Origin: Leucoraja erinacea | Lineage: Eukaryota | Direction of reading: 5' to 3' | Length of the DNA: 64,000 nt | Assembly (NCBI RefSeq): GCF_028641065.1 | Contig: NC_073391.1 | Span: 5,332,001-5,396,000, forward strand | Part shown: positions 446 to 53,385 of the stretch, piece by piece | How the letters are laid out: the number at the start of each line of letters is the position of its first letter | Position numbering within the stretch: position 1 is the stretch's first letter | Notes under the pieces: generated by a model | The model's database searches: none | The model's input: only the letters and a program-made list of their open reading frames with translations | What the model was told of the DNA's origin: nothing | Made by a program: the position numbers and the translations under genes

Positions 446-1744
446 ACAAAGCAGAGGCTGGGATCCATGTAGGTCAGGAATTCTGGATTTTCCTGCCATT
501 GGCACAAGACCTATTCTTGCAACCTGCAGTCACCAGTCCCCACATGGTCCAAGGCAATCATTGCTATGATGCTAATGAAATAGGAAAGCGAAAAATGTGA
601 AAAATGATTAAATATGTTGAATATACCTCAAATCAACTACAAGCATTTGAAAACAATGTTGTAATAAAAAGCACCAAATCCAAAATAACTTAAAAGGAAG
701 AGACTTAATCTTCCCCTTCCATTCTTCCTCAGAGTCCTCTTTGAAATCAATGGCCTTACTTGGACATCTCAGACAATTCCTGCTCTATTGCTGGAAAAAA
801 ACAATGCACAGCTCAGTAAAAGCTACTGAAACTCAGCCAGAAAATTACAGCTTTCTACCTTCATATTGGAGACCTGTGGCAACATTGCACTTAAATTGAG
901 AAATGACTGTCTTTCTACACAGAATTATTGGCATTTACCAAGAAGGCTAGATCAACATCAAATACAATTTCTAGTCCAACTTTTAGACTGTGTCTATGGA
1001 GACTACTACATTTACAGATTATTGGACTGTCCAATAATCCTGTCCAAAAACAAAATAATAACCAAAATACATTACTTTGGTGGAAAAATATGTTATATCA
1101 ACATAAATCAGATCAGCCATCATATTATTTTTATGCTTGTACATTCAGGTTACTACTTTGCTTCAAATCTATGGTCACATTTGTAAGTAGAGCTCTGCTT
1201 TCCCAGTTTTCCCAGTAAATGCTTTGAAACTCAAAGGATGAATAGAGCAACCTAAATATTATTTTCTGGTTTACTGGAACAAACATGCAAGCAGTATGCT
1301 TCCAACAGGTGTCATATAACTTTGTTTATATCCTAATAGGGAATTTAATACAAAGACAGCATTTGCAGCATTTTCAAACTACCTTATCCTCCAATTTTGT
1401 AAATATGACAATGCATGAGGCTTTTTATTCACGGCCAAATAAATTAGTTCTATATTCTCTGGAGTTTAAAGTAAGCTGGGAGTGATCTTATTGAAACATG
1501 TTAGTTCCTTCGAGGGCAGAGTAGATGTCGAGATGGTTTCACGATTTGGAGAATCTCAGAGAAAGTCCCATTTGCCTGCATTATGCCCATTTCCCTCAAA
1601 AGCTTTCTTATCCTTGTGAGGATAAAACGAACTGCAGATGCTGGTTTACAAAAGAAAGGCACAAAATGCTGGAGTAACTCAGTGGGTCAGGCAGCATATC
1701 TGAAGAACATGGATAGGTGACAGTTCGGGTCAGGACCCTTCTTC

Positions 1745-1920
1745 ATAGAAACATAGAACATAGGTGCAGGAGCAGGTCATTCGGCCCTTCGAGCCTGCAC
1801 CGCCATTCAATATGATCATGGCTGATCATCCAACTCAGTATCTCATGCCTGCCTTCTCTCCATACCCCCTGATCCCTTTAGCCACAAGGGCCACATCTAA
1901 CTCCCTCTTAAATATAGCCA
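1745..1920 (-). mobile_element. CR1 3' end, left half of the copy split by DIRS element A
   Basis: CATAGAAA tail and 3' UTR near-identical to the reverse complement of 8550-8730. Confidence 0.88.
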
Positions 1921-2096
1921 ATTTTACTTCGGAGTCACGTGAGTGACTACGTGAAGAACCCACCCAGCGCGCAGGCGCGGCATTACGTCAGCAGTGCAAC
2001 AGCGGCAGCAGCTGGAGCCAGGCTCTCCAGCTGCAGCATAAAGACGAGACCTCAGGTAAGTGCCTTTTTTGTTTCAGAGTCGCGCTAGAGAGAATA

Positions 2097-3308
2097 ATGG
2101 CCTCTCGCAAGCGACCAGCCAGGAGGACTGCCTGCCCTACTCCACCCGAGGACGGGTCCATAGCGGGACGGCAGCCTCTCGCAGCGGAGGAGCTTTTTCA
2201 ACGCTCCCGCTCACCCGACACCGAGCCGCCCCCAGTGCTGCAAATCTCAACGCCCCGCACAGGGAGGAAGGCGACACAGAAAACCGACCGGCCGGTGTCC
2301 TCCGATGATTCGGAGGAACGGGAACACTCTCCCCCACCGAAAAGGGGAGACGTTCGGATAAGCTGCATGAGGCAGCTCCTCGAACGTATGATTAATGAGG
2401 AGATGCGGCATCTCCCAGGAGGACGGGCTTTGGCCTCCTCCTCTCCACACCCTTCTGTACCCTCTATATTCGAGGGCAGTAAGGGAGGCCAGGACTGGGC
2501 TGGCCTATCCCAAGGGCAGGCGGAGGATATCGTCAGCATGCCGGGCGTGCCGGAAGAAGAGCTACTGGGTGTAGTGGGCCGATATGCGGCACCACCAACA
2601 ACTGGGATGGTGTTGCCACCCAGAATGGCGGCAACTATAAACAGGCTGTCCAACAACCCGCTGCAGGACAAGGCTGTCCAGCAGGCCCTTGACAACTACA
2701 TCGCGCCCGAAAATTGCGAGGCGCTGAGGGTCAAGACGGTAAATGGGCAGATCTGGAACCAGCTGGGGCAGCACATAAGGGCTCAGGAGGTCAAAATGCA
2801 GCGAGTCCTGAAGCTACACTCAGCAGCCGTCACCGCCTTTGCTCGGTCAGTTGGGGAGGAAGACCTGACCATACCCCAGCAAGATGCCCTCGCACTGATG
2901 TGCGGCACCACGTACGAGCTAAACAACCTACGGCGGGACAACATCAGGCCTGCCCTCAACCCAACATATGCGGGCCTCTGTAAAGCTCCAGCGCCCGAAC
3001 GACAGGCGCTGCTATTTGGTGCGGATCTGGCCAAAAGGCTCAAGGAGTTGGAAGAGGCGGCAAAACCAGTAGGCCTCATGAGGGCAGGGCCAGGACCGAG
3101 CAGGGCGAAGACACCCAGTTGGCCGCACGCCTCGGCAGCCACCAGCAGATACCGAGCTGGTGAAAGCCTGGTGACCGCCTCCCACTACCCCCAGTGCTCT
3201 TTTTTAGAGCGGGGCCCAGGGCGGAGCCGTGGGAAGATGCGCCGCCCCACCGCAGCACCAACACGGACAACCTTGGGCCAGACCCACCGGAAACGACCCC
3301 ACAAGTGA
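2097..3308 (+). CDS. DIRS gag-like ORF1 (element A)
   Basis: 403 aa open frame, first ORF inside the DIRS termini. C-terminal half aligns by eye with element B ORF1 (PENCEALRVKTVN / PKNCNALHVASVN; LLFGADLAK / LLFGGDLSK). Confidence 0.88.
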   Translation: MASRKRPARRTACPTPPEDGSIAGRQPLAAEELFQRSRSPDTEPPPVLQISTPRTGRKATQKTDRPVSSDDSEEREHSPPPKRGDVRISCMRQLLERMINEEMRHLPGGRALASSSPHPSVPSIFEGSKGGQDWAGLSQGQAEDIVSMPGVPEEELLGVVGRYAAPPTTGMVLPPRMAATINRLSNNPLQDKAVQQALDNYIAPENCEALRVKTVNGQIWNQLGQHIRAQEVKMQRVLKLHSAAVTAFARSVGEEDLTIPQQDALALMCGTTYELNNLRRDNIRPALNPTYAGLCKAPAPERQALLFGADLAKRLKELEEAAKPVGLMRAGPGPSRAKTPSWPHASAATSRYRAGESLVTASHYPQCSFLERGPGRSRGKMRRPTAAPTRTTLGQTHRKRPHK

Positions 3309-3310
3309 AC

Positions 3311-5245
3311 ATGGAGGTAGGTGGGTCTGGTTCCTGTCAACATACACAGACAAAGGGTGTAGTATTAACAGGGGGACGTTTGAGGTTCTTCAAGCATGTT
3401 TGGTGCTCCCTTACTAACAATCAGTTTATACTCAACAGTATTAGTGGATACAAGATTGAATTCAAACCAGGCGTAGAACCGCCAGTTCAGCACATGCCCC
3501 AAAGGGTGTTCCTTCCCTCGGCAGTTGAGAAGGTAGAAGGACAAGCTGAACTTGATCGGCTCGTGGCTAAAGGCATCATAGAAATGACCACACACGAGCC
3601 GCAAGAATTTGTATCAAATATTTTTCTCAAAACTAAAAAAGATGGTGGATGTCGCATTATTATTGACCTGACATCACTTAATCAGTCTGTTGAGTATCAA
3701 CATTTCAAAATGGAGACATTTGTCACTGCCAGACAACTGATCTCCAAGGGATACTACATGGCAAGCATAGATATCAAAGATGCTTACTATTTGGTACCCA
3801 TTCATAAAGATTACTTTAAATATCTGAAATTTATCTGGAGGGGCCAGCTATGGCAGTACCGAGCTTTGCCCAATGGTTTAACGACAGCTCCCAGACTATT
3901 TACGAAAATTCTTAAAGTGGCCATGAAGAAATTGAGAGAATTAAAACATTTAGTAGTGGCCTATCTGGACGATGTTCTCATATTAGGAAGAACACGTGAT
4001 CAAGCTGTCGCAGGAGTGTTAGCCACTAAACAACTCCTTGAAACTTTGGGTTTTATCCTCCACCCAGATAAATCAATATTGGAGCCTACTACTAACATGG
4101 ATTACTTAGGCTTCACTATTGACACGATTCACATGACTGTCACTCTGCCCAGAAACAAAACAGTTTCACTCATTGAAGCTTGTAGCCATTTAATTGCCAC
4201 ACCGCAACCTAGAATACGGCATGTAGCCAGAGTTATTGGCTCTATAGTAGCAGCATTTCCGGCTGCCCAACATGGGCCCTTGCATTATCAAAATCTCCAA
4301 AGAGCAAGGACTCATGCATTACGCCTTCATAGGGGGCATTATGATCGCAAAATGGATTTACCCGCTGAAGCCAAATTAGAACTTCAGTGGTGGGTTGACA
4401 ATATTTGGCACAGTCACAGTCCTATCACCGTAACCAATCCTAACATAACCATTGCAACGGATGCCAGTGCTTTAGGCTGGGGAGCTACTAACTCCAAAGA
4501 CAGCACAGGTGGCAGATGGACTAATTCAGAGGCATCGCTACTACACTCACTGGGCATTAACTTTTTGGAAATGCTCGCCGCCTTTTATGGGCTAAAAGCA
4601 TATGCATCTGGTATGCGACACGTGCATGTTAGAATTATGATCGACAACACTACGGCAGTATCTTATATCCAGCACATGGGTGGCATTAAATCAGTATCAT
4701 GCGACAAATTAACTGCTATAATCTGGCAATGGTGTGTCGAGAGACACATTTGGCTATCAGCTGCCTATTTACCAGGCAAGCTAAATTTAGTGGCGGACAC
4801 CAGGTCACGAAAATTCAACGACAACATCGAATGGATGTTGGACCCAAAATCATTTGCTAAAATTATCAAGCAATATGGTACGCCAGATATAGATTTGTTT
4901 GCGTCTAGGTTAAATCACCAACTACCCATGTATGTGGCTTGGGAACCAGACCCAGAGGCAGCAGCGGTAGATGCCTTCACGCTGGACTGGGGAAATTTCT
5001 TTTTCTATGCTTTCCCTCCCTTCTGCCTCATCAGTCGGGTACTCCAGAAAATTCAGGCAGACTCAGCCTCTGGCATTCTGGTCGTGCCCGACTGGCCTAC
5101 CCAACCATGGTTCCCAATGTTCCACGACATGGTGGTAGAGACACCAATGGTCCTTCAACACCACCCCCAATTATTGACTCACCCGGTAACTGGCATTAGC
5201 CATCCATGCCACCAAAAATTGAAACTCCTGGTTTCCAGATTTTGA
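3311..5245 (+). CDS. DIRS pol: reverse transcriptase - RNase H - adenine-methyltransferase-like domain (element A)
   Basis: RT motifs SIDIKDAY, LPNGL, YLDD; RNase H motifs TDAS, INFLEML, IDNTTAV, VADTRSR; C-terminal IDLFAS...YAFPPF. Start placed at the ATG (MEVG) conserved in both elements, 2 nt after the gag stop. Confidence 0.95.
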   Translation: MEVGGSGSCQHTQTKGVVLTGGRLRFFKHVWCSLTNNQFILNSISGYKIEFKPGVEPPVQHMPQRVFLPSAVEKVEGQAELDRLVAKGIIEMTTHEPQEFVSNIFLKTKKDGGCRIIIDLTSLNQSVEYQHFKMETFVTARQLISKGYYMASIDIKDAYYLVPIHKDYFKYLKFIWRGQLWQYRALPNGLTTAPRLFTKILKVAMKKLRELKHLVVAYLDDVLILGRTRDQAVAGVLATKQLLETLGFILHPDKSILEPTTNMDYLGFTIDTIHMTVTLPRNKTVSLIEACSHLIATPQPRIRHVARVIGSIVAAFPAAQHGPLHYQNLQRARTHALRLHRGHYDRKMDLPAEAKLELQWWVDNIWHSHSPITVTNPNITIATDASALGWGATNSKDSTGGRWTNSEASLLHSLGINFLEMLAAFYGLKAYASGMRHVHVRIMIDNTTAVSYIQHMGGIKSVSCDKLTAIIWQWCVERHIWLSAAYLPGKLNLVADTRSRKFNDNIEWMLDPKSFAKIIKQYGTPDIDLFASRLNHQLPMYVAWEPDPEAAAVDAFTLDWGNFFFYAFPPFCLISRVLQKIQADSASGILVVPDWPTQPWFPMFHDMVVETPMVLQHHPQLLTHPVTGISHPCHQKLKLLVSRF

Positions 5246-6216
5246 ACAGGCCTTACCGGGGATTGGGGTTATCAGACAGAACAATCACCACCATGTCGGC
5301 ATCCCTGCGAGTTTCCACCAAGAAACAGTACCTGACCTTCATCAGGAAATGGGAACAGTACTGTCTGGACGCAGGGACATCCTACACGACGACTTCGATC
5401 TCGGATGTGCTGGAGTTCCTGGCCCACCTGCACCATGATCTCAAGATGAGCTACAGTGCCATCAACACGGCTCGGAGCGCACTGTCCGCATATCTAATGC
5501 CGATAGAACAGCATAGTGTGGGATCCCACCCTCTAGTCATCAGACTCCTTAAGGGGATCTTTAATACCAAACCCCCTACACCTAGATACACTCACATGTG
5601 GGATGTGAGTGTGGTTCTCACACACCTTCGAGGTTGGCCTCCGGTGGGATCCCTGAGCCTGGAACAGGCCACTTACAAAACCCTCATGCTCATGGCGCTT
5701 GTCTCAGCTCAAAGGGTCCAGTCGCTCCATCAGCTTAATCTAAACTACATGGTGACCACCCCAGATACCATTACTTTCACTATGCCGGGGTTGGTAAAAC
5801 AAAGTAGACCAGGTACATCAAACTCCCCGATGATCTTCCGGGCTTACCCTCCAGAACCTAGGCTGTGTGTGGTGACCCACCTTCAACATTATCTAGACAC
5901 TACCCAAACGCTAAGAGGGAGAGAGAAAGCCTTATGGGTTAGCCACAGGAAGCCTTTTGGACGGGTAACCAGACAAACATTATCCAGATGGTTGAAACAG
6001 GTCCTCAGCATGGCAGGGATTAACACTAATGTTTTTAAATCCCATTCAACCAGGGCAGCGTCCACCTCAGCGGCGGATAGGATGCAGGTTCCCCTCGACC
6101 ACATCCTCAGGGCAGCGGGATGGTCAAGGGAATCGACATTCCAACGATTTTACAACAAACCGCTGATGGAACAGGACGTCTTTGCGGATACTCTTTTACA
6201 AACCGCAAAGTTATGA
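5239..6216 (+). CDS. DIRS tyrosine recombinase (element A); probable spliced start
   Basis: Catalytic signature R (AQRV), HSTR, AGW, Y (FQRFY). 5' boundary placed at the inferred splice acceptor (CAG|ATT, 5238/5239). Confidence 0.93.
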   Translation: MLNRPYRGLGLSDRTITTMSASLRVSTKKQYLTFIRKWEQYCLDAGTSYTTTSISDVLEFLAHLHHDLKMSYSAINTARSALSAYLMPIEQHSVGSHPLVIRLLKGIFNTKPPTPRYTHMWDVSVVLTHLRGWPPVGSLSLEQATYKTLMLMALVSAQRVQSLHQLNLNYMVTTPDTITFTMPGLVKQSRPGTSNSPMIFRAYPPEPRLCVVTHLQHYLDTTQTLRGREKALWVSHRKPFGRVTRQTLSRWLKQVLSMAGINTNVFKSHSTRAASTSAADRMQVPLDHILRAAGWSRESTFQRFYNKPLMEQDVFADTLLQTAKL

Positions 6217-6379
6217 TTTAAAGCCCATGGGAGCTATTTTGTTTTTTGTTATAGTTAATAAATATTTCTTTTATAACTAAACAAACTTGTTGGTCTCTAG
6301 CTACCACTTCCTCCCTCGATGACCTTTCGGCAGTGAGTGATATAACTGTTACACGGTTTGAAATCACAGACCTTTGAAG

Positions 6380-6492
6380 TCTTCACGTAGTCACTCACGT
6401 GACTCCGAAGTAAAATAGTAAGATTAAACGAGTACTTACCAGTACGAAGTTTGATCTGTATTTTATGAGGAGTTACGATGAGGGATTACGTG
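6380..6492 (+). repeat. Internal complementary region (ICR) of DIRS element A
   Basis: 6380-6416 is the reverse complement of 1921-1957 and 6414-6492 is the reverse complement of 6637-6715. The two halves overlap on AAT, reproducing the circle junction. Confidence 0.95.
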
Positions 6493-6715
6493 CCCTCCGC
6501 TCCCACCCTCATTATATAGATCAAATTCGGACTAATGTCTCGTTGGTCTTCACTATCTTTACTTCAACTAGTGTCTATCTGTGATTCCACACCGCTGCTT
6601 GGAAGTATGCCGCGCCTGCGCGCTGGGTGGGTTCTTCACGTAATCCCTCATCGTAACTCCTCATAAAATACAGATCAAACTTCGTACTGGTAAGTACTCG
6701 TTTAATCTTACTATT

Positions 6716-7275
6716 AACTGGCCTCAACTGCTTTCTGTGGCAGAGAGTTCCAAAGATTCACCACTCTTTGTGTGAAAAATGTTTTTCTCATCTCGGTCCT
6801 AAAGAGTTTCCCATCTATCCTTAAGCTGTGACCCCTTGTCCTGGACTTCCCCAACATCGGGAACAATCTTCCTGCATCTAGCCTGTCCAACCCATTAAGA
6901 ATTTTGTAAGTTTCTATAAGATCCCCCCTCAATCTCTTAAATTCTAGCGAGTACAAGCCGAGTCTATCCAGTTTTTCCTCATATGAAAGTCCTGACATCC
7001 CAGGAATCAGTCTGGTGAACCATCTCTGCACTCCCTCTATGGCAATAATGTCCTTCCTCAGATTTGGAGACCAAAACTGTACGCAATACTCCAGGTGTGG
7101 TCTCACCAAGACCCTGTCCAACTGCAGTAGAACCTCCCTGCTCCTATACTCAAATCCTTTTGCAATGAATGCTAACATACCATTCGCTTTCTACACTGCC
7201 TGCTGCACCTGCATGCCTACTTTCAATGACTGGTGTACCATGACACCCAGGTCTCGTTGCATCTCCCCTTTTCCT
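6716..7275 (-). mobile_element. CR1 ORF2 C-terminal fragment, right half of the copy split by DIRS element A
   Basis: ORF 6714-7178 (LVRPHLEYCVQFWSP...FFTQRVVNLWNSLP) continues seamlessly into 1920 leftwards once the DIRS is removed. Confidence 0.9.
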
Positions 7276-7853: not shown

Positions 7854-9305
7854 CAGTGCATTCAGAAAGTATTCAGACCACTTCACTTTTTCCACATTTT
7901 GTTATGTCGCAGCCTTATTTTAAAATGGATTAAATTTGTTTTTTTAAATCATCAATCTACACACAAAACCCCATAATAAAAAAGTGAAAGCAGGTGTTTA
8001 GAAATTTTTGCAAAGTAATTAAAAAGTAATAACGGAAATATCACATTTACATAAGTATTCCGACCCTTTACTCAGTACTTTGTTGAGGCACATTTGGCAG
8101 TGATTACAGCCTCAAGTCTTCTTGGATATGACTCCACAAGCGTGGCACACCTGTATTTGGGTAATTTGAGGAATAATATCCGTAATATGAGGAGGTAATA
8201 TCTGGGGAAGGACATTATTGCCATAGAGGGAGTGCAGAGACGGTTCACTAGACTGATTCCTGGGATGTCAGGACTGTCTTATGAAGAAAGACTGGATAGA
8301 CTTGGTTTATACTCTCTAGAATTTAGAAGATTGAGAGGGGATCTTATAGAAACTTACAAAATTCTTAAGGGGTTGGACAGGCTAGATGCAGGAAGATTGT
8401 TCCCGATGTTAGGGAAGTCCAGGACAAGGGGTCACAGCTTAAGGATAAAGGGGAAATCCTTTAAAACCGAGATGAGAAGAACTTTTTTCACGCAGAGAGT
8501 GGTGAATCTCTGGAACTCTCTGCCACAGAGGGTAGTTGAGGCCAGTTCATTGGCTATATTTAAGAGGGAGTTAGATGTGGCACTTGTGGCTAAGGGGATC
8601 AGGGGGTATGGAGAGAAGGCAGGTATGGGATACTGAGTTGGATGATCAGCCATGATCATATTGAATGGCGGTGCAGGCTCGAAGGGCCGAATGGCCTACT
8701 CCTGCACCTAATTTCTATGTTTCTATGTTTCTAATTTCTCCCATTTTTCTATGCAGATCCTCTCAAGCTCTGTCAGGTTGGATGGGGAGCGTCGATGCAC
8801 AGCTATTTTCAGGTCGCTCCAGAGATGTTCGATCGGGTTCAAGTCCGGGCGCTGGCTGGGCCACTCAAGGACATTCACAGACTTGTCACAAAGCCACTCC
8901 TGCGTTTTCTTGGCTGTGTGCTTAGGGTCGTTGTCCTGTTGGAAATTGAACCTCCACCCCAGTCTGACGTCCTGAATGCTCTGGAGCAGGTTTTCATCAA
9001 GGATTTCTCTGTACTTTGCTCCGTTCATCTTTCCCTTGATCCTGACCAGTCTCCCAGTTCCTGCCTCTGAAAAACATCCCCACAGCATGATGCTGCCACT
9101 GCCCTTGGAATGGTATTGGCCAGGTGATGAGCGGTGCCTGGTTTCCTCCAGATGTGACGCTTGGTATTCAGGCCAAAGAGTTCAATCTTGGTTTCATCAG
9201 ACCAGAGAATCTTGTTTCTCATGGTCTGAGACTCCTTTGGGTGCCTTTTGGCAAACTCCAAGCGGGCAGTCATGTGCCTTTTACTGAGGAGTGGCCATTC
9301 TACCA
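7854..9305 (-). mobile_element. Tc1/mariner (DD34E) transposon, truncated and interrupted by a CR1
   Basis: TA followed by CAGTGCATTCAGAAAGTATTCAGAC terminal repeat. Minus-strand WSDETKIE, WGCFS, FQQDNDPKH and PDLNPIEHLW motifs across a frameshift. Confidence 0.9.
8168..8730 (+). mobile_element. CR1 3' fragment inserted in the Tc1
   Basis: ORF 8232-8636 is the CR1 ORF2 C-terminus; (TTTCTATG)n tail; flanked by TAATTT on both sides. Confidence 0.9.
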
Positions 9306-52769: not shown

Positions 52770-53385
52770 GTAGGAGCAGGGAGGTTCTACTGCAGTTGTA
52801 CAGGGTATTGGTGAGACCACACCTGGAGTATTGTGTACAGTTTTGGTCTCCAAATCTGAGCAAAGACATTCTTGCCATAGAGGGAGTACAGAGAAGGTTC
52901 ACCAGTCTGATTCCTGGGATGTCAGGACTTTCATATGAAGAAAGACTGGATAGACTCGGCTTGTACTCGCTAGAATTTAGAAGATTGAGGGGGGATCTTA
53001 TAGAAACTTACCAAATTCTTAAGGGGTTGGACAAGCTAGATGCAGGAAGATTGTTCCCGATGTTGGGAAAGTCCAGGACAAGGGTTCACAGTTTAAGGAT
53101 AAAGGGGAAATCCTTTAGGACCGAGATGAGAAAAACATTTTTCACAGAGAGTGGTGAATCTCTGGAACTCTCTGCCACAGAAGGTAGTTGAGGCCAGTTC
53201 ATTGGCTATATTTAAGAAGGGGGTTAGATGTGACCCTTGTGGCTAAAGGGATCAGGGGGTATGGAGAGAAGGCAGGTACTGGATACTGAGTTGGATGATC
53301 AGCCATGATCATATTGAATGGCGGTGCAGGCTCAAAGGGCCGAATGGCCTACTCCTGCACCTAATTTCTATGTTTCTATGTTTCT
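52770..53385 (+). mobile_element. CR1 3' fragment inserted in a Penelope-derived repeat
   Basis: REVLLQLYRVLVRPHLEYCVQFWSP...; (TTTCTATG)n tail; the host repeat resumes at TGTCCCGCTGAGTTA. Confidence 0.88.

What the first reader, a model, noticed from the sequence alone, without database searches (positions are those of the whole stretch)
3311..5260. DIRS recombinase appears to be expressed by splicing out the whole pol gene, sharing the pol start codon
Seen: both diverged elements begin pol with the identical 13-mer ATGGAG|GTAGGTG (3311 and 28561), a good start codon followed after two codons by a consensus-like donor (GT at 3317 and 28567), while the flanking sequence has diverged. Both have a pyrimidine-rich YAG at the homologous position where pol ends (ctcctggtttccag|ATT at 5238/5239; atttgttggcttgtag|ACT at 30479/30480). 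Joining them is in frame with YR and gives collinear N-termini: ME-ILNRPYRGLGLSDRTI (A) and ME-TLKEPLRDMGLSSRTV (B). The YR frames have no ATG at a shared position, and in B the frame is closed by TAG right at the acceptor. Inference: the ~1.9 kb RT-RNaseH-MT region is a retained intron, so one ATG makes pol (unspliced) or YR (spliced). I do not know of this being described for vertebrate DIRS1-like elements, whose downstream-ORF expression is poorly understood.
Basis: partly seen in the sequence, partly recalled or inferred. Interest (0 to 1): 0.85.

Follow-up and report, generated by a model that had tools for sequence, protein, structure and literature searches.

The report
DIRS recombinase likely made by splicing
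Two skate-like DIRS retrotransposons, and about forty distant relatives, carry conserved in-phase splice signals that would cut out the reverse-transcriptase gene to express the recombinase, but one RNA run showed no spliced reads.

Summary
ATGGAG|GTAGGTG sits at 3311 and 28561. A pyrimidine-rich YAG sits at 5238 and 30479, in phase with the recombinase (YR) frame.

The splice idea gains strong comparative support:
- GAG|GTAGGT is identical at the same spot in two distant relatives.
- In 16 of 30 DIRS families the best donor-like site of the whole element lies in this short gag-to-RT linker (1.7 expected). It is in phase 0 of the pol frame in 24 of 30.
- In 17 of 38 families the best acceptor-like site is in phase with YR, where the YR frame opens (0.55 expected).
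- The acceptor position differs among families, and the frame opening moves with it.
- Four RefSeq gene models (two sea-urchin loci, a brittle star, an abalone) join gag directly to YR at the predicted junctions, with no pol.

Two corrections are needed. First, pol is most likely made as Gag-Pol by -1 frameshifting at an in-register U UUU UUA. Second, the ATG exists only in A and B, so it is not a general pol start codon. Relatives would make a Gag-YR fusion.

Direct evidence is missing. One oligo-dT RNA run, sampled at 5% and about 12 reads deep at the donor, showed no junction. Contigs of three other runs are unspliced.

Other first-stage notes of this scan flag the same arrangement in three more elements of this genome.

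The parts
1921..6715 (+). DIRS1-like element A: inverted terminal repeats, internal complementary region, gag, pol, YR
   Evidence: Self-BLAST shows inverted terminal and internal repeats at 1921-1983 / 6607-6669, 6380-6416 and 6414-6492 / 6637-6715. ORFs. Pfam RVT_1 and Phage_integrase hits.
2053..2061 (+). Leader donor-like site CAG|GTAAGT (GT at 2056), 40 nt before the gag ATG and followed within 22 nt by a Y-rich cag
   Evidence: Top-scoring 5'ss-like site of element A. Sequence. No use of it seen in reads.
2097..3308 (+). gag ORF of A (403 aa)
   Evidence: Homologous to gag of the relatives by tblastn.
3200..3206 (+). Slippery heptamer T TTT TTA in gag register: inferred -1 frameshift site into the pol frame
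   Evidence: Register read directly from the sequence. The same or an AAAAAAC heptamer lies in register in most relatives. It is an invariant island in the alignment.
3194..5245 (+). pol frame ORF of A (RT-RNaseH-MT); open from 3194, stop at 5243-5245
3311..3316 (+). ATG GAG: last two codons of the proposed exon 1, in good Kozak context (A at -3, G at +4)
3314..3322 (+). Donor-like site GAG|GTAGGT, phase 0 of the pol frame
   Evidence: Identical 9-mer at the homologous spot in B, L002 and L006. Second-best donor score of the element.
3317..5238 (+). Proposed 1922-nt intron covering nearly all of pol
   Evidence: Inferred from the two sites. Implied introns in relatives are 1658-1913 nt. No junction reads found.
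5206..5208 (+). ATG in the YR frame upstream of the acceptor-like site (possible rival start, A only)
   Evidence: The 336-aa ORF forms P0123 and P0125 start here.
5219..5238 (+). Acceptor-like site: pyrimidine-rich tract plus CAG, phase 0 of the YR frame. The AG is also the start of the pol Arg codon AGA
   Evidence: Weak score (5.2, rank 12). The same position is rank 1 in L002, L005 and L006.
5239..6216 (+). YR coding region of A (proposed exon 2; 325 aa plus stop)
26876..31965 (+). DIRS1-like element B. Its 5' side abuts masked N runs, which I did not fill
27016..27024 (+). Leader donor-like site CAG|GTAAGT of B (GT at 27019), followed 32 nt later by ttgttttag just before the gag ATG
27053..28540 (+). 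gag ORF of B (495 aa)
   Evidence: 74% identical to Leucoraja erinacea LOC129696901.
28423..28429 (+). Slippery heptamer T TTT TTA in gag register (B)
28561..28572 (+). ATG GAG|GTAGGT: start codon plus donor-like site of B (GT at 28567)
28567..30479 (+). Proposed 1913-nt intron of B
   Evidence: Inferred.
30460..30479 (+). Acceptor-like site of B (..ttgttggcttgtag). Its TAG closes the YR frame
30480..31454 (+). YR coding region of B. The first ATG in frame is at 30504-30506

Best explanation
Elements A and B are intact DIRS1-like retrotransposons with the gene order gag, RT-RNaseH-MT, YR. Their full-length RNA carries a weak, regulated intron.

The proposed sites:
- Donor: GAG|GTAGGT just after gag, in phase 0 of the pol frame.
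- Acceptor: a YAG at the very end of pol, in phase 0 of the YR frame.

The proposed products:
- Unspliced RNA serves as the genome. It is also the mRNA for Gag and, through -1 ribosomal frameshifting at U UUU UUA, for Gag-Pol.
- Spliced RNA keeps gag, the frameshift site and a short pol-frame linker, and joins that linker in frame to YR.
- YR is then made in one of two ways. It may be a Gag-linker-YR fusion through the same frameshift; this is the only route open to relatives without an ATG. In A and B it may also be a free protein starting at the ATG two codons before the donor, which lies 2 nt (A) or 20 nt (B) after the gag stop.

What is shown:
- The sites, their phases and their conservation.
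- The co-variation of acceptor position with the opening of the YR frame.
- The in-register slippery heptamers.
- Gene models in other animals that have exactly this join.

What is inferred:
- That the splice happens in this species.
- Which translation route is used.
- That frameshifting occurs.
For: 1. Donor. The 9-mer GAG|GTAGGT is identical in A, B, L002 and L006 inside a linker that otherwise cannot be aligned. On the + strand of the 80 loci it occurs only once elsewhere. In 30 families, the best 5'ss-like site of a scan of about 4.3 kb falls in the roughly 240-nt linker in 16 (1.7 expected) and is in the top 3 in 25. It is in phase 0 in 24 of 30. Typical forms are CAG|GTGAGT and GAG|GTGAGT.

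2. Acceptor. In 38 families, the best acceptor-like site that is in phase with YR and inside the open YR frame is rank 1 of about 280 AGs in 17 (0.55 expected) and in the top 3 in 30. The control phases 1 and 2 give 0 and 1 rank-1 cases.

3. Co-variation. The acceptor falls into position classes at -216, -201, -141, about -75 and 0 relative to A's first YR codon. The YR frame opens 0-27 nt upstream of the acceptor in most families. At -216 the Ser codon is AGY in 27 families and TCN in 5, against a 26% AGY background. The families with TCN, Cys, Asn or Ala there carry their acceptor elsewhere.

4. Many families have a long open YR frame with no ATG, and no conserved slippery heptamer in the pol/YR overlap. 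Translation must therefore enter from upstream.

5. Both ends together. In 17 of 29 families the in-phase donor and the in-phase acceptor are both in the top 3 of the element.

6. Gene models. P0128 (XP_071502116.1, Diadema antillarum), P0276 (second D. antillarum locus), P0280 (Amphiura filiformis) and P0168 (XP_046546323.1, Haliotis rubra) have a Gag N-terminus. They read the slip site in the pol frame ('FFR') and carry a linker ending in E or Q that joins directly to the YR start. The joins are ..LPKE|VLKLPFENSGMS..KPAE|IVRRSL and ..PYEQ|CYRASPTED. None has any pol.

7. Frameshift. Gag to pol is a -1 shift in nearly all families, and TTTTTTA or AAAAAAC lies in gag register.
Against: No junction between 3316 and 5239 appeared in the one true RNA run laid (X24, oligo-dT). 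About 5% of the run was read, at roughly 12 reads deep at the donor and 48 at the acceptor. There is no step in depth at either site, and both strands are covered about equally.

Contigs of X1, X5 and X10 run unspliced across both sites. These runs may be DNA, and contigs drop rare forms in any case.

The cluster of A's own YR holds only 307-, 324- and 336-aa forms. None starts with ME followed by the YR sequence.

The acceptors of A and B score weakly (rank 12 and rank 8). Their AG doubles as a conserved pol Arg codon, and the -216 acceptor tract doubles as the conserved FPPF motif, so coding constraint explains part of the signal.

I could not check whether the RefSeq models rest on RNA-seq introns or are ab initio. 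They also contain an extra intron inside gag that looks like a device to avoid the frameshift.

Related families are not fully independent. No frameshift-stimulating structure stood out (z scores near 0).
Confidence: 0.62

Rival explanations
1. Translation-level expression with no splicing. YR is made from the full-length RNA by termination-reinitiation or another recoding event at the pol stop. It would start at ATG 5206 in A (37 nt before the pol stop) and at ATG 30504 in B (20 nt after it). The splice-like motifs would be by-products of coding: Val-Gly or Val-Ser codons, the Arg AGR codon, and the FPPF-Ser motif.
For: A has an in-frame ATG at 5206, and 336-aa ORF forms start there. B and the skate model P0018 start at MGLS. 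Pol to YR is a -1 shift in 70 of 74 loci. No spliced reads were seen. Many other families have an ATG, CTG or TTG two codons before the conserved YR start.
Against: The two ATGs are not homologous. In A, starting at the next ATG (5293) would drop the conserved GLS motif. L001 and L006 have no ATG anywhere near. B's overlap window is 4 nt and has no slippery sequence, and no conserved heptamer exists in any overlap. This rival does not explain four things: the invariant third-codon positions of GAG GTA GGT, the AGY bias at -216, the movement of the acceptor together with the frame opening, or the pol-less gene models.
Confidence: 0.17
2. The donor-like site is a genuine U1 snRNP binding site, but it is used for something else. 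It could stabilise the RNA or suppress premature polyadenylation of the full-length transcript. It could also pair with a different acceptor. Alternatively, the leader donor CAG|GTAAGT, not the post-gag donor, is the one that joins to the YR acceptor, as in a retroviral env-type mRNA.
For: A and B have a perfect-consensus donor in the leader. Joined to the YR acceptor, it would leave a first AUG in the YR frame in both elements (5293 and 30504). Several families have YAG|ATG at the -201 acceptor, so they need no upstream reading frame. U1-dependent control of full-length versus short RNA is documented for plant Ty1/Copia (PMC5580714).
Against: The post-gag donor is in phase 0 of the pol frame in 24 of 30 families, although only phases 0 and 1 are possible inside an ORF. 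The gene models use the post-gag join. In A, a leader-to-YR join would lose the conserved N-terminal residues up to GLS.
Confidence: 0.13
3. Coincidence or relic. A and B share the 13-mer by descent, the AG by coding constraint, and nothing functional follows.
For: A and B are related, and only two copies lie in the window. Both acceptors are weak.
Against: The flanks of the 13-mer have diverged beyond alignment while the 9-mer core is kept in relatives whose YR is only 44-47% identical to A's. The family-wide enrichments are far beyond chance.
Confidence: 0.05

Closest known systems
Ty1/Copia retrotransposons: Drosophila copia (recalled from memory) and plant EVD and others (PMC5580714)
   Same: An intron inside the element's own coding region is alternatively spliced. 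One primary transcript thus gives both the full-length genomic/polyprotein RNA and a shorter subgenomic mRNA. The splice sites are weak and conserved across families.
   Different: In those elements the spliced RNA serves to overproduce Gag. Here the spliced RNA would bring a downstream enzyme gene (YR) into frame, the intron is almost the whole RT-RNaseH-MT gene, and the product may be a Gag-YR fusion.
Retroviral env mRNA, and spliced pol mRNA of foamy viruses (established knowledge)
   Same: A downstream gene is expressed from a singly spliced subgenomic RNA, while the unspliced RNA is kept as genome and gag-pol mRNA.
   Different: The retroviral major donor lies in the leader before gag, so gag is removed. 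Here the conserved donor lies after gag and in phase with the reading frame, so gag and its frameshift site stay in the spliced RNA. No envelope gene is involved.
-1 programmed ribosomal frameshifting for Gag-Pol (HIV-1 uses U UUU UUA; established knowledge)
   Same: The same heptamer lies in the same register at a gag/pol overlap with a -1 relation.
   Different: No stimulatory stem-loop could be shown here. In the proposed scheme the same frameshift site would serve two mRNAs, giving Gag-Pol and Gag-YR.
DIRS1-like retrotransposons as described (PMC3266345, PMC9210276, PMC7192593)
   Same: Gag, RT/RNaseH/MT and YR genes, inverted terminal repeats, an internal complementary region, and frequent 'long ORF overlap' between pol and YR.
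   Different: None of the papers I searched or read proposes how YR is expressed or mentions natural splicing. The long overlap is reported as a descriptive feature. Here it is explained as exon 2 beginning inside pol.

Membership tests
DIRS1-like retrotransposon (order DIRS) | Reverse transcriptase/RNase H gene | tested here: met
   Pfam RVT_1, E = 4e-19 (A) and 2e-19 (B).
DIRS1-like retrotransposon (order DIRS) | Tyrosine recombinase gene instead of a DDE integrase | tested here: met
   Pfam Phage_integrase for both, plus the SAM-like N-terminal domain in A. 450 YR relatives found.
DIRS1-like retrotransposon (order DIRS) | Inverted terminal repeats plus an internal complementary region near the 3' end | tested here: met
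   Inverted self-matches at 1921-1983 / 6607-6669, 6380-6416 / 1921-1957 and 6414-6492 / 6637-6715, with the equivalents in B.
DIRS1-like retrotransposon (order DIRS) | Methyltransferase-like domain after RNase H | tested here: inconclusive
   Pfam found no MT family in A or B. The conserved FPPF / WPTQ region is present. Homologous regions of P0135 and P0171 give weak Dam / PCIF1_WW hits.
Retroelement with a spliced subgenomic mRNA | Conserved 5' and 3' splice signals at fixed positions across family members | tested here: met
Retroelement with a spliced subgenomic mRNA | RNA molecules that carry the exon-exon junction | tested here: inconclusive
   None found in X24 raw reads at low depth, nor in contigs of X1, X5 and X10. 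Pol-less gag-YR RefSeq models exist in other animals, but their RNA support could not be checked.
Retroelement with a spliced subgenomic mRNA | The spliced RNA encodes a functional product in frame | tested here: met
   The donor is in phase 0 of the pol frame and the acceptor in phase 0 of the YR frame. Both frames are open up to the sites. I did not build the joined sequence.
-1 PRF Gag-Pol expression | X XXY YYZ heptamer in the zero-frame register inside a -1 overlap | tested here: met
   T TTT TTA at 3200-3206 and 28423-28429. TTTTTTA or AAAAAAC lies in register in most relatives.
-1 PRF Gag-Pol expression | Downstream stimulatory RNA structure | tested here: inconclusive
   MFE z scores from -0.2 to +0.7 for four elements. 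Pseudoknots are not modelled.
-1 PRF Gag-Pol expression | Measured frameshifting | not testable with these tools
   Needs a reporter assay or ribosome profiling.

The most novel reading that the evidence does not exclude
Metazoan DIRS1-like retrotransposons in general would express their tyrosine recombinase from a spliced RNA in which the whole RT-RNaseH-MT gene is an intron. Because donor and acceptor are both in phase, the single gag/pol frameshift site would yield Gag-Pol from unspliced RNA and a Gag-YR fusion from spliced RNA. The long-noted 'long ORF overlap' of pol and YR would simply be exon 2 starting inside pol. Skate elements such as A and B would have added an ATG at the exon-1 end so that free YR can also be made.
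Probability: 0.5. Interest if true: 0.85.

Novelty: new variant of a known kind. Interest (0 to 1): 0.78.

Why it matters
How DIRS elements express their recombinase has not been explained. The papers I could search describe only overlapping ORFs.

A splice that removes pol would do four things:
- Give the order DIRS a defined gene-expression programme, comparable to those of retroviruses and copia.
- Explain the puzzling pol/YR overlaps and the recombinase ORFs that lack an ATG.
- Predict a Gag-YR fusion that could carry the recombinase into particles.
- Predict pol-less spliced copies in genomes.

It also matters for annotation. Gene finders already emit gag-YR 'uncharacterized proteins' that may be real transposon mRNAs.

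The claim can be tested directly with RT-PCR, long-read cDNA, or inspection of the RNA-seq evidence behind four existing RefSeq models.

Tried and rejected
I could not fetch the DNA behind P0001, P0128, P0168 or P0280.

2. Canonical -1 slippery heptamers in the pol/YR overlap: none is conserved. A second frameshift was therefore rejected as the general route.

3. L067 looked like a gag-YR spliced copy, but it is an internal deletion. It keeps 160 nt of pol after the donor, so it is not evidence.

4. The cluster of A's YR and the N-termini of 120 YR relatives show no spliced-type ORF.

5. Searching with B's gag for skate gag-YR models found only two gag-only Leucoraja erinacea models.

6. RNA folding downstream of the slip site gave no signal above shuffled sequences.

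7. Long single ORFs with YR but no RVT_1 hit (P0215, P0216, P0236, P0254) turned out to be the YR frame staying open across pol. They are not spliced forms.

8. Literature searches for DIRS splicing found nothing relevant.

9. I left out the step of joining the exons. I built no spliced sequence and searched for none. Exons were searched separately by reference.
Full report
**What is there.** The window holds two intact DIRS1-like retrotransposons.

| Feature | Element A (about 1921-6715) | Element B (about 26876-31965) |
|---|---|---|
| gag | 2097-3308 | 27053-28540 |
| pol frame open | 3194-5245 | 28387-30486 |
| YR frame open | 5200-6216 | 30480-31454 |

 Pfam finds RVT_1 in both pol products and Phage_integrase in both downstream products. 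Self-comparison shows the inverted termini and the internal complementary region. A and B are about 66% identical in pol but about 90% identical in the terminal repeats. The closest named proteins are from the little skate, Leucoraja erinacea.

**Check of the observation.**
- The 13-mer ATGGAGGTAGGTG occurs only at 3311 and 28561 in the window (0.1 expected with up to one mismatch).
- The YAG sites are at 5236-5238 and 30477-30479.
- Codon phases are as stated.
The homologous triplet in B is GTG and is followed by stops.

**Is the ATG the pol start?** Probably not in general.
- In A and B the pol frame is the -1 frame of gag.
- The heptamer T TTT TTA (3200-3206 and 28423-28429) lies inside the gag/pol overlap in exact gag register. 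I read this directly.
- Among 80 related loci from metagenomes (YR 39-50% identical to A's), gag to pol is -1 in nearly all.
- A TTTTTTA or AAAAAAC heptamer is in register in most of them. Many have no ATG at all in the pol frame before RT.
- Pol is therefore best read as a Gag-Pol frameshift product.
- No stimulatory hairpin stood out, so this remains an inference from the heptamer, the frame relation and the missing ATGs.
- The 'pre-pol acceptor' ttttttag of an earlier first-stage note (s1-877141) is this slip site.

**The donor.** In a four-way alignment of the gag-to-RT linker (A, B, L002, L006), only two nucleotide islands are invariant. One is the slip site and the other is GAGGTAGGT.
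- The codon before it is ATG only in A and B. It is ACA in L002 and GAT in L006.
- On the + strand of the 80 loci the 9-mer occurs just once elsewhere.
- I scored every GT with a rough 5' splice-site matrix.
- In 16 of 30 families, the best site of the whole scan of about 4.3 kb lies in the linker of about 240 nt (1.7 expected). It is in the top three in 25 families.
- It is in phase 0 of the pol frame in 24 of 30 families. Inside an ORF only phases 0 and 1 are possible for GTRAGT.
- Typical forms are CAG|GTGAGT, GAG|GTGAGT and AAG|GTGAGT, which read [Q/E/K]-Val-Ser with Ser always as AGT.

**The acceptor.** Positions below are given relative to A's first YR codon.

A, B, L001, L002, L005 and L006 form a short-overlap group.
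- The YR frame is closed 0-13 codons upstream (5-7 in the four metagenome loci, 13 in A, 0 in B).
- Except for A's ATG at 5206 there is no ATG, and a pyrimidine tract plus YAG ends exactly at position 0.
- This site is rank 1 of all AGs in L002, L005 and L006, but only rank 12 in A and rank 7-8 in B.

Most other families have the 'long ORF overlap' described in the literature (PMC3266345).
- Their YR frame opens near -216, and their top acceptor-like site is at -216. It is the end of the conserved FPPF-Ser motif, ..cctcctttcag|T.
- Smaller groups have it at -201 (YAG|ATG), at -141 or near -75.

Over 38 families:
- The best site that is in phase with YR and inside the open YR frame is rank 1 in 17 (0.55 expected) and in the top three in 30.
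- The two control phases give 0 and 1 rank-1 cases.
- At -216 the Ser codon is AGY in 27 families and TCN in 5, against 26% AGY among the Ser codons of pol.
- The families with TCN, Cys, Asn or Ala there are the ones whose acceptor and frame opening lie elsewhere.
- In 17 of 29 families with both ends present, the in-phase donor and the in-phase acceptor are both among the top three. The implied introns are 1658-1922 nt.

No conserved slippery heptamer exists in the pol/YR overlap. Many long YR frames contain no ATG. A reading frame entering from an upstream exon explains these data better than a second frameshift or reinitiation.

**Gene models elsewhere.** A profile search of 1.84 billion proteins returned long proteins with a C-terminal YR and no RT. 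Four are RefSeq models:
- P0128 = XP_071502116.1, Diadema antillarum.
- P0276, a second locus in D. antillarum.
- P0280, Amphiura filiformis.
- P0168 = XP_046546323.1, Haliotis rubra.

Their N-termini match gag of the loci and their C-termini match YR. Nothing in them matches pol.
- Each reads the slip site in the pol frame ('FFR').
- Each continues through a short linker that ends in E or Q.
- Each then joins directly to the YR start: ..LPKE|VLKLPFENSGMS.. and ..KPAE|IVRRSL.. (position 0 class), and ..PYEQ|CYRASPTED.. (-216 class).
- These are the junctions predicted from the DNA of other families.

Two caveats apply. I could not see whether RNA-seq supports these introns. All four models also contain an extra intron inside gag that moves into the -1 frame, which may be the annotation pipeline's way around the frameshift.

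**RNA in this species.** The element is present at near full length in several runs. Laying four runs on 1921-6715 gave no joint between 3316 and 5239 and none from the leader donor.
- X24 is the only run on record as RNA. About 5% of it was read.
- Depth was about 12 at the donor and about 48 at the acceptor, with both strands covered alike and no step at either site.
- A bump from about 4748 to 5760 carries its own variants, so it comes from another copy.
- A joint needed at least three reads to be listed. A spliced share below roughly a quarter at the donor would therefore be missed.
- X1, X5 and X10 are contigs of uncertain kind and show the unspliced form.

**Mechanism proposed.** Unspliced RNA is the genome and encodes Gag and frameshifted Gag-Pol. 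Inefficient splicing from the post-gag donor to the acceptor at the pol/YR boundary yields a gag-plus-YR mRNA. The same frameshift then gives Gag-linker-YR. In A and B the ATG two codons before the donor, in a strong Kozak context just after the gag stop, could also start free YR.

The predicted free N-terminus is Met, one residue, then the conserved YR start. This is collinear with the families whose YR frame has an ATG two codons upstream (MP-LVR.., MS-VIR..).

**Rivals.** The rivals are translational coupling at the pol stop, a U1 site with another role or use of the leader donor instead, and plain coincidence. I weigh them in the rival section.

**Limits.**
- The scoring matrices are approximate, and related families share ancestry. 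The enrichment figures are therefore descriptive, not exact probabilities.
- The papers I could search contain no report of natural splicing in DIRS elements. Subscription papers were not searchable.

**Verdict.**
- The intron reading is well supported by comparison across families and by gene models in other animals. It is unproven at the RNA level in this species.
- The 'shared pol start codon' should be replaced by 'shared reading frame after the gag/pol frameshift site, with an added ATG in A and B'.

Noticed in passing
window 3200-3206 and 28423-28429: A T TTT TTA heptamer lies in exact gag register inside the gag/pol -1 overlap. It is conserved, or replaced by AAAAAAC, in most related families. 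This is a likely Gag-Pol frameshift site. It also explains the 'ttttttag acceptor' of an earlier first-stage note.
   Followed up: yes
window 2053-2077 and 27016-27051: In both leaders a perfect donor CAG|GTAAGT is followed only 22 nt (A) or 32 nt (B) later by a strong pyrimidine tract plus AG, just before the gag ATG. That is too short for an ordinary intron. The two sites may each pair with distant partners. No use of them was seen in reads.
   Followed up: partly
window 5983-6715 vs 31224-31965: The non-coding 3' region with the terminal repeat and internal complementary region is about 90% identical between A and B in its repeat cores. The pol genes are only about 66% identical. This points to strong constraint on, or exchange of, the recombination sites.
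   Followed up: no
window 4748-5760: RNA-seq depth in X24 rises about five-fold here. The rise comes with fixed variants (for example 4747 C>T in all reads) and read ends at 4748 and 5567. This looks like a fragmentary copy embedded in an expressed host transcript.
   Followed up: no
window 1744-1922 and 6713-7146: The flanks of element A match inverted copies at 8200-8727 and 52771-53380, and more diverged copies elsewhere. A is therefore inserted in another repeat family.
   Followed up: no
L067 1180-1600: This is a non-autonomous DIRS. It keeps gag, an AAAAAAC slip site, a donor-like ACAG|GTTAGT and the first 50 or so pol residues, then jumps to the end of pol and a full YR. It is an internal deletion whose ends are not at the splice-like sites.
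   Followed up: yes
proteins P0215, P0216, P0236, P0254: Single ORFs of 790-1031 aa end in YR but have no RT hit. The YR frame stays open across nearly all of pol, an extreme overlap like that described for Dictyostelium DIRS-1.
   Followed up: partly
proteins P0128, P0276, P0280, P0168: All four RefSeq gag-YR models contain a further intron inside gag. It runs from near the conserved RD.KLQ or PVT..LF motifs to a point 25-45 codons before the slip site, and it switches to the -1 frame. It is either an annotation device or a real splice that bypasses frameshifting.
   Followed up: no
protein P0002 (Leucoraja erinacea LOC129695449): This model runs from the pol C-terminus straight into YR. The frame changes at the A-run that in element A reads ccaaaaatt (about 5212-5220). 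A one-base length difference there would fuse pol and YR.
   Followed up: no
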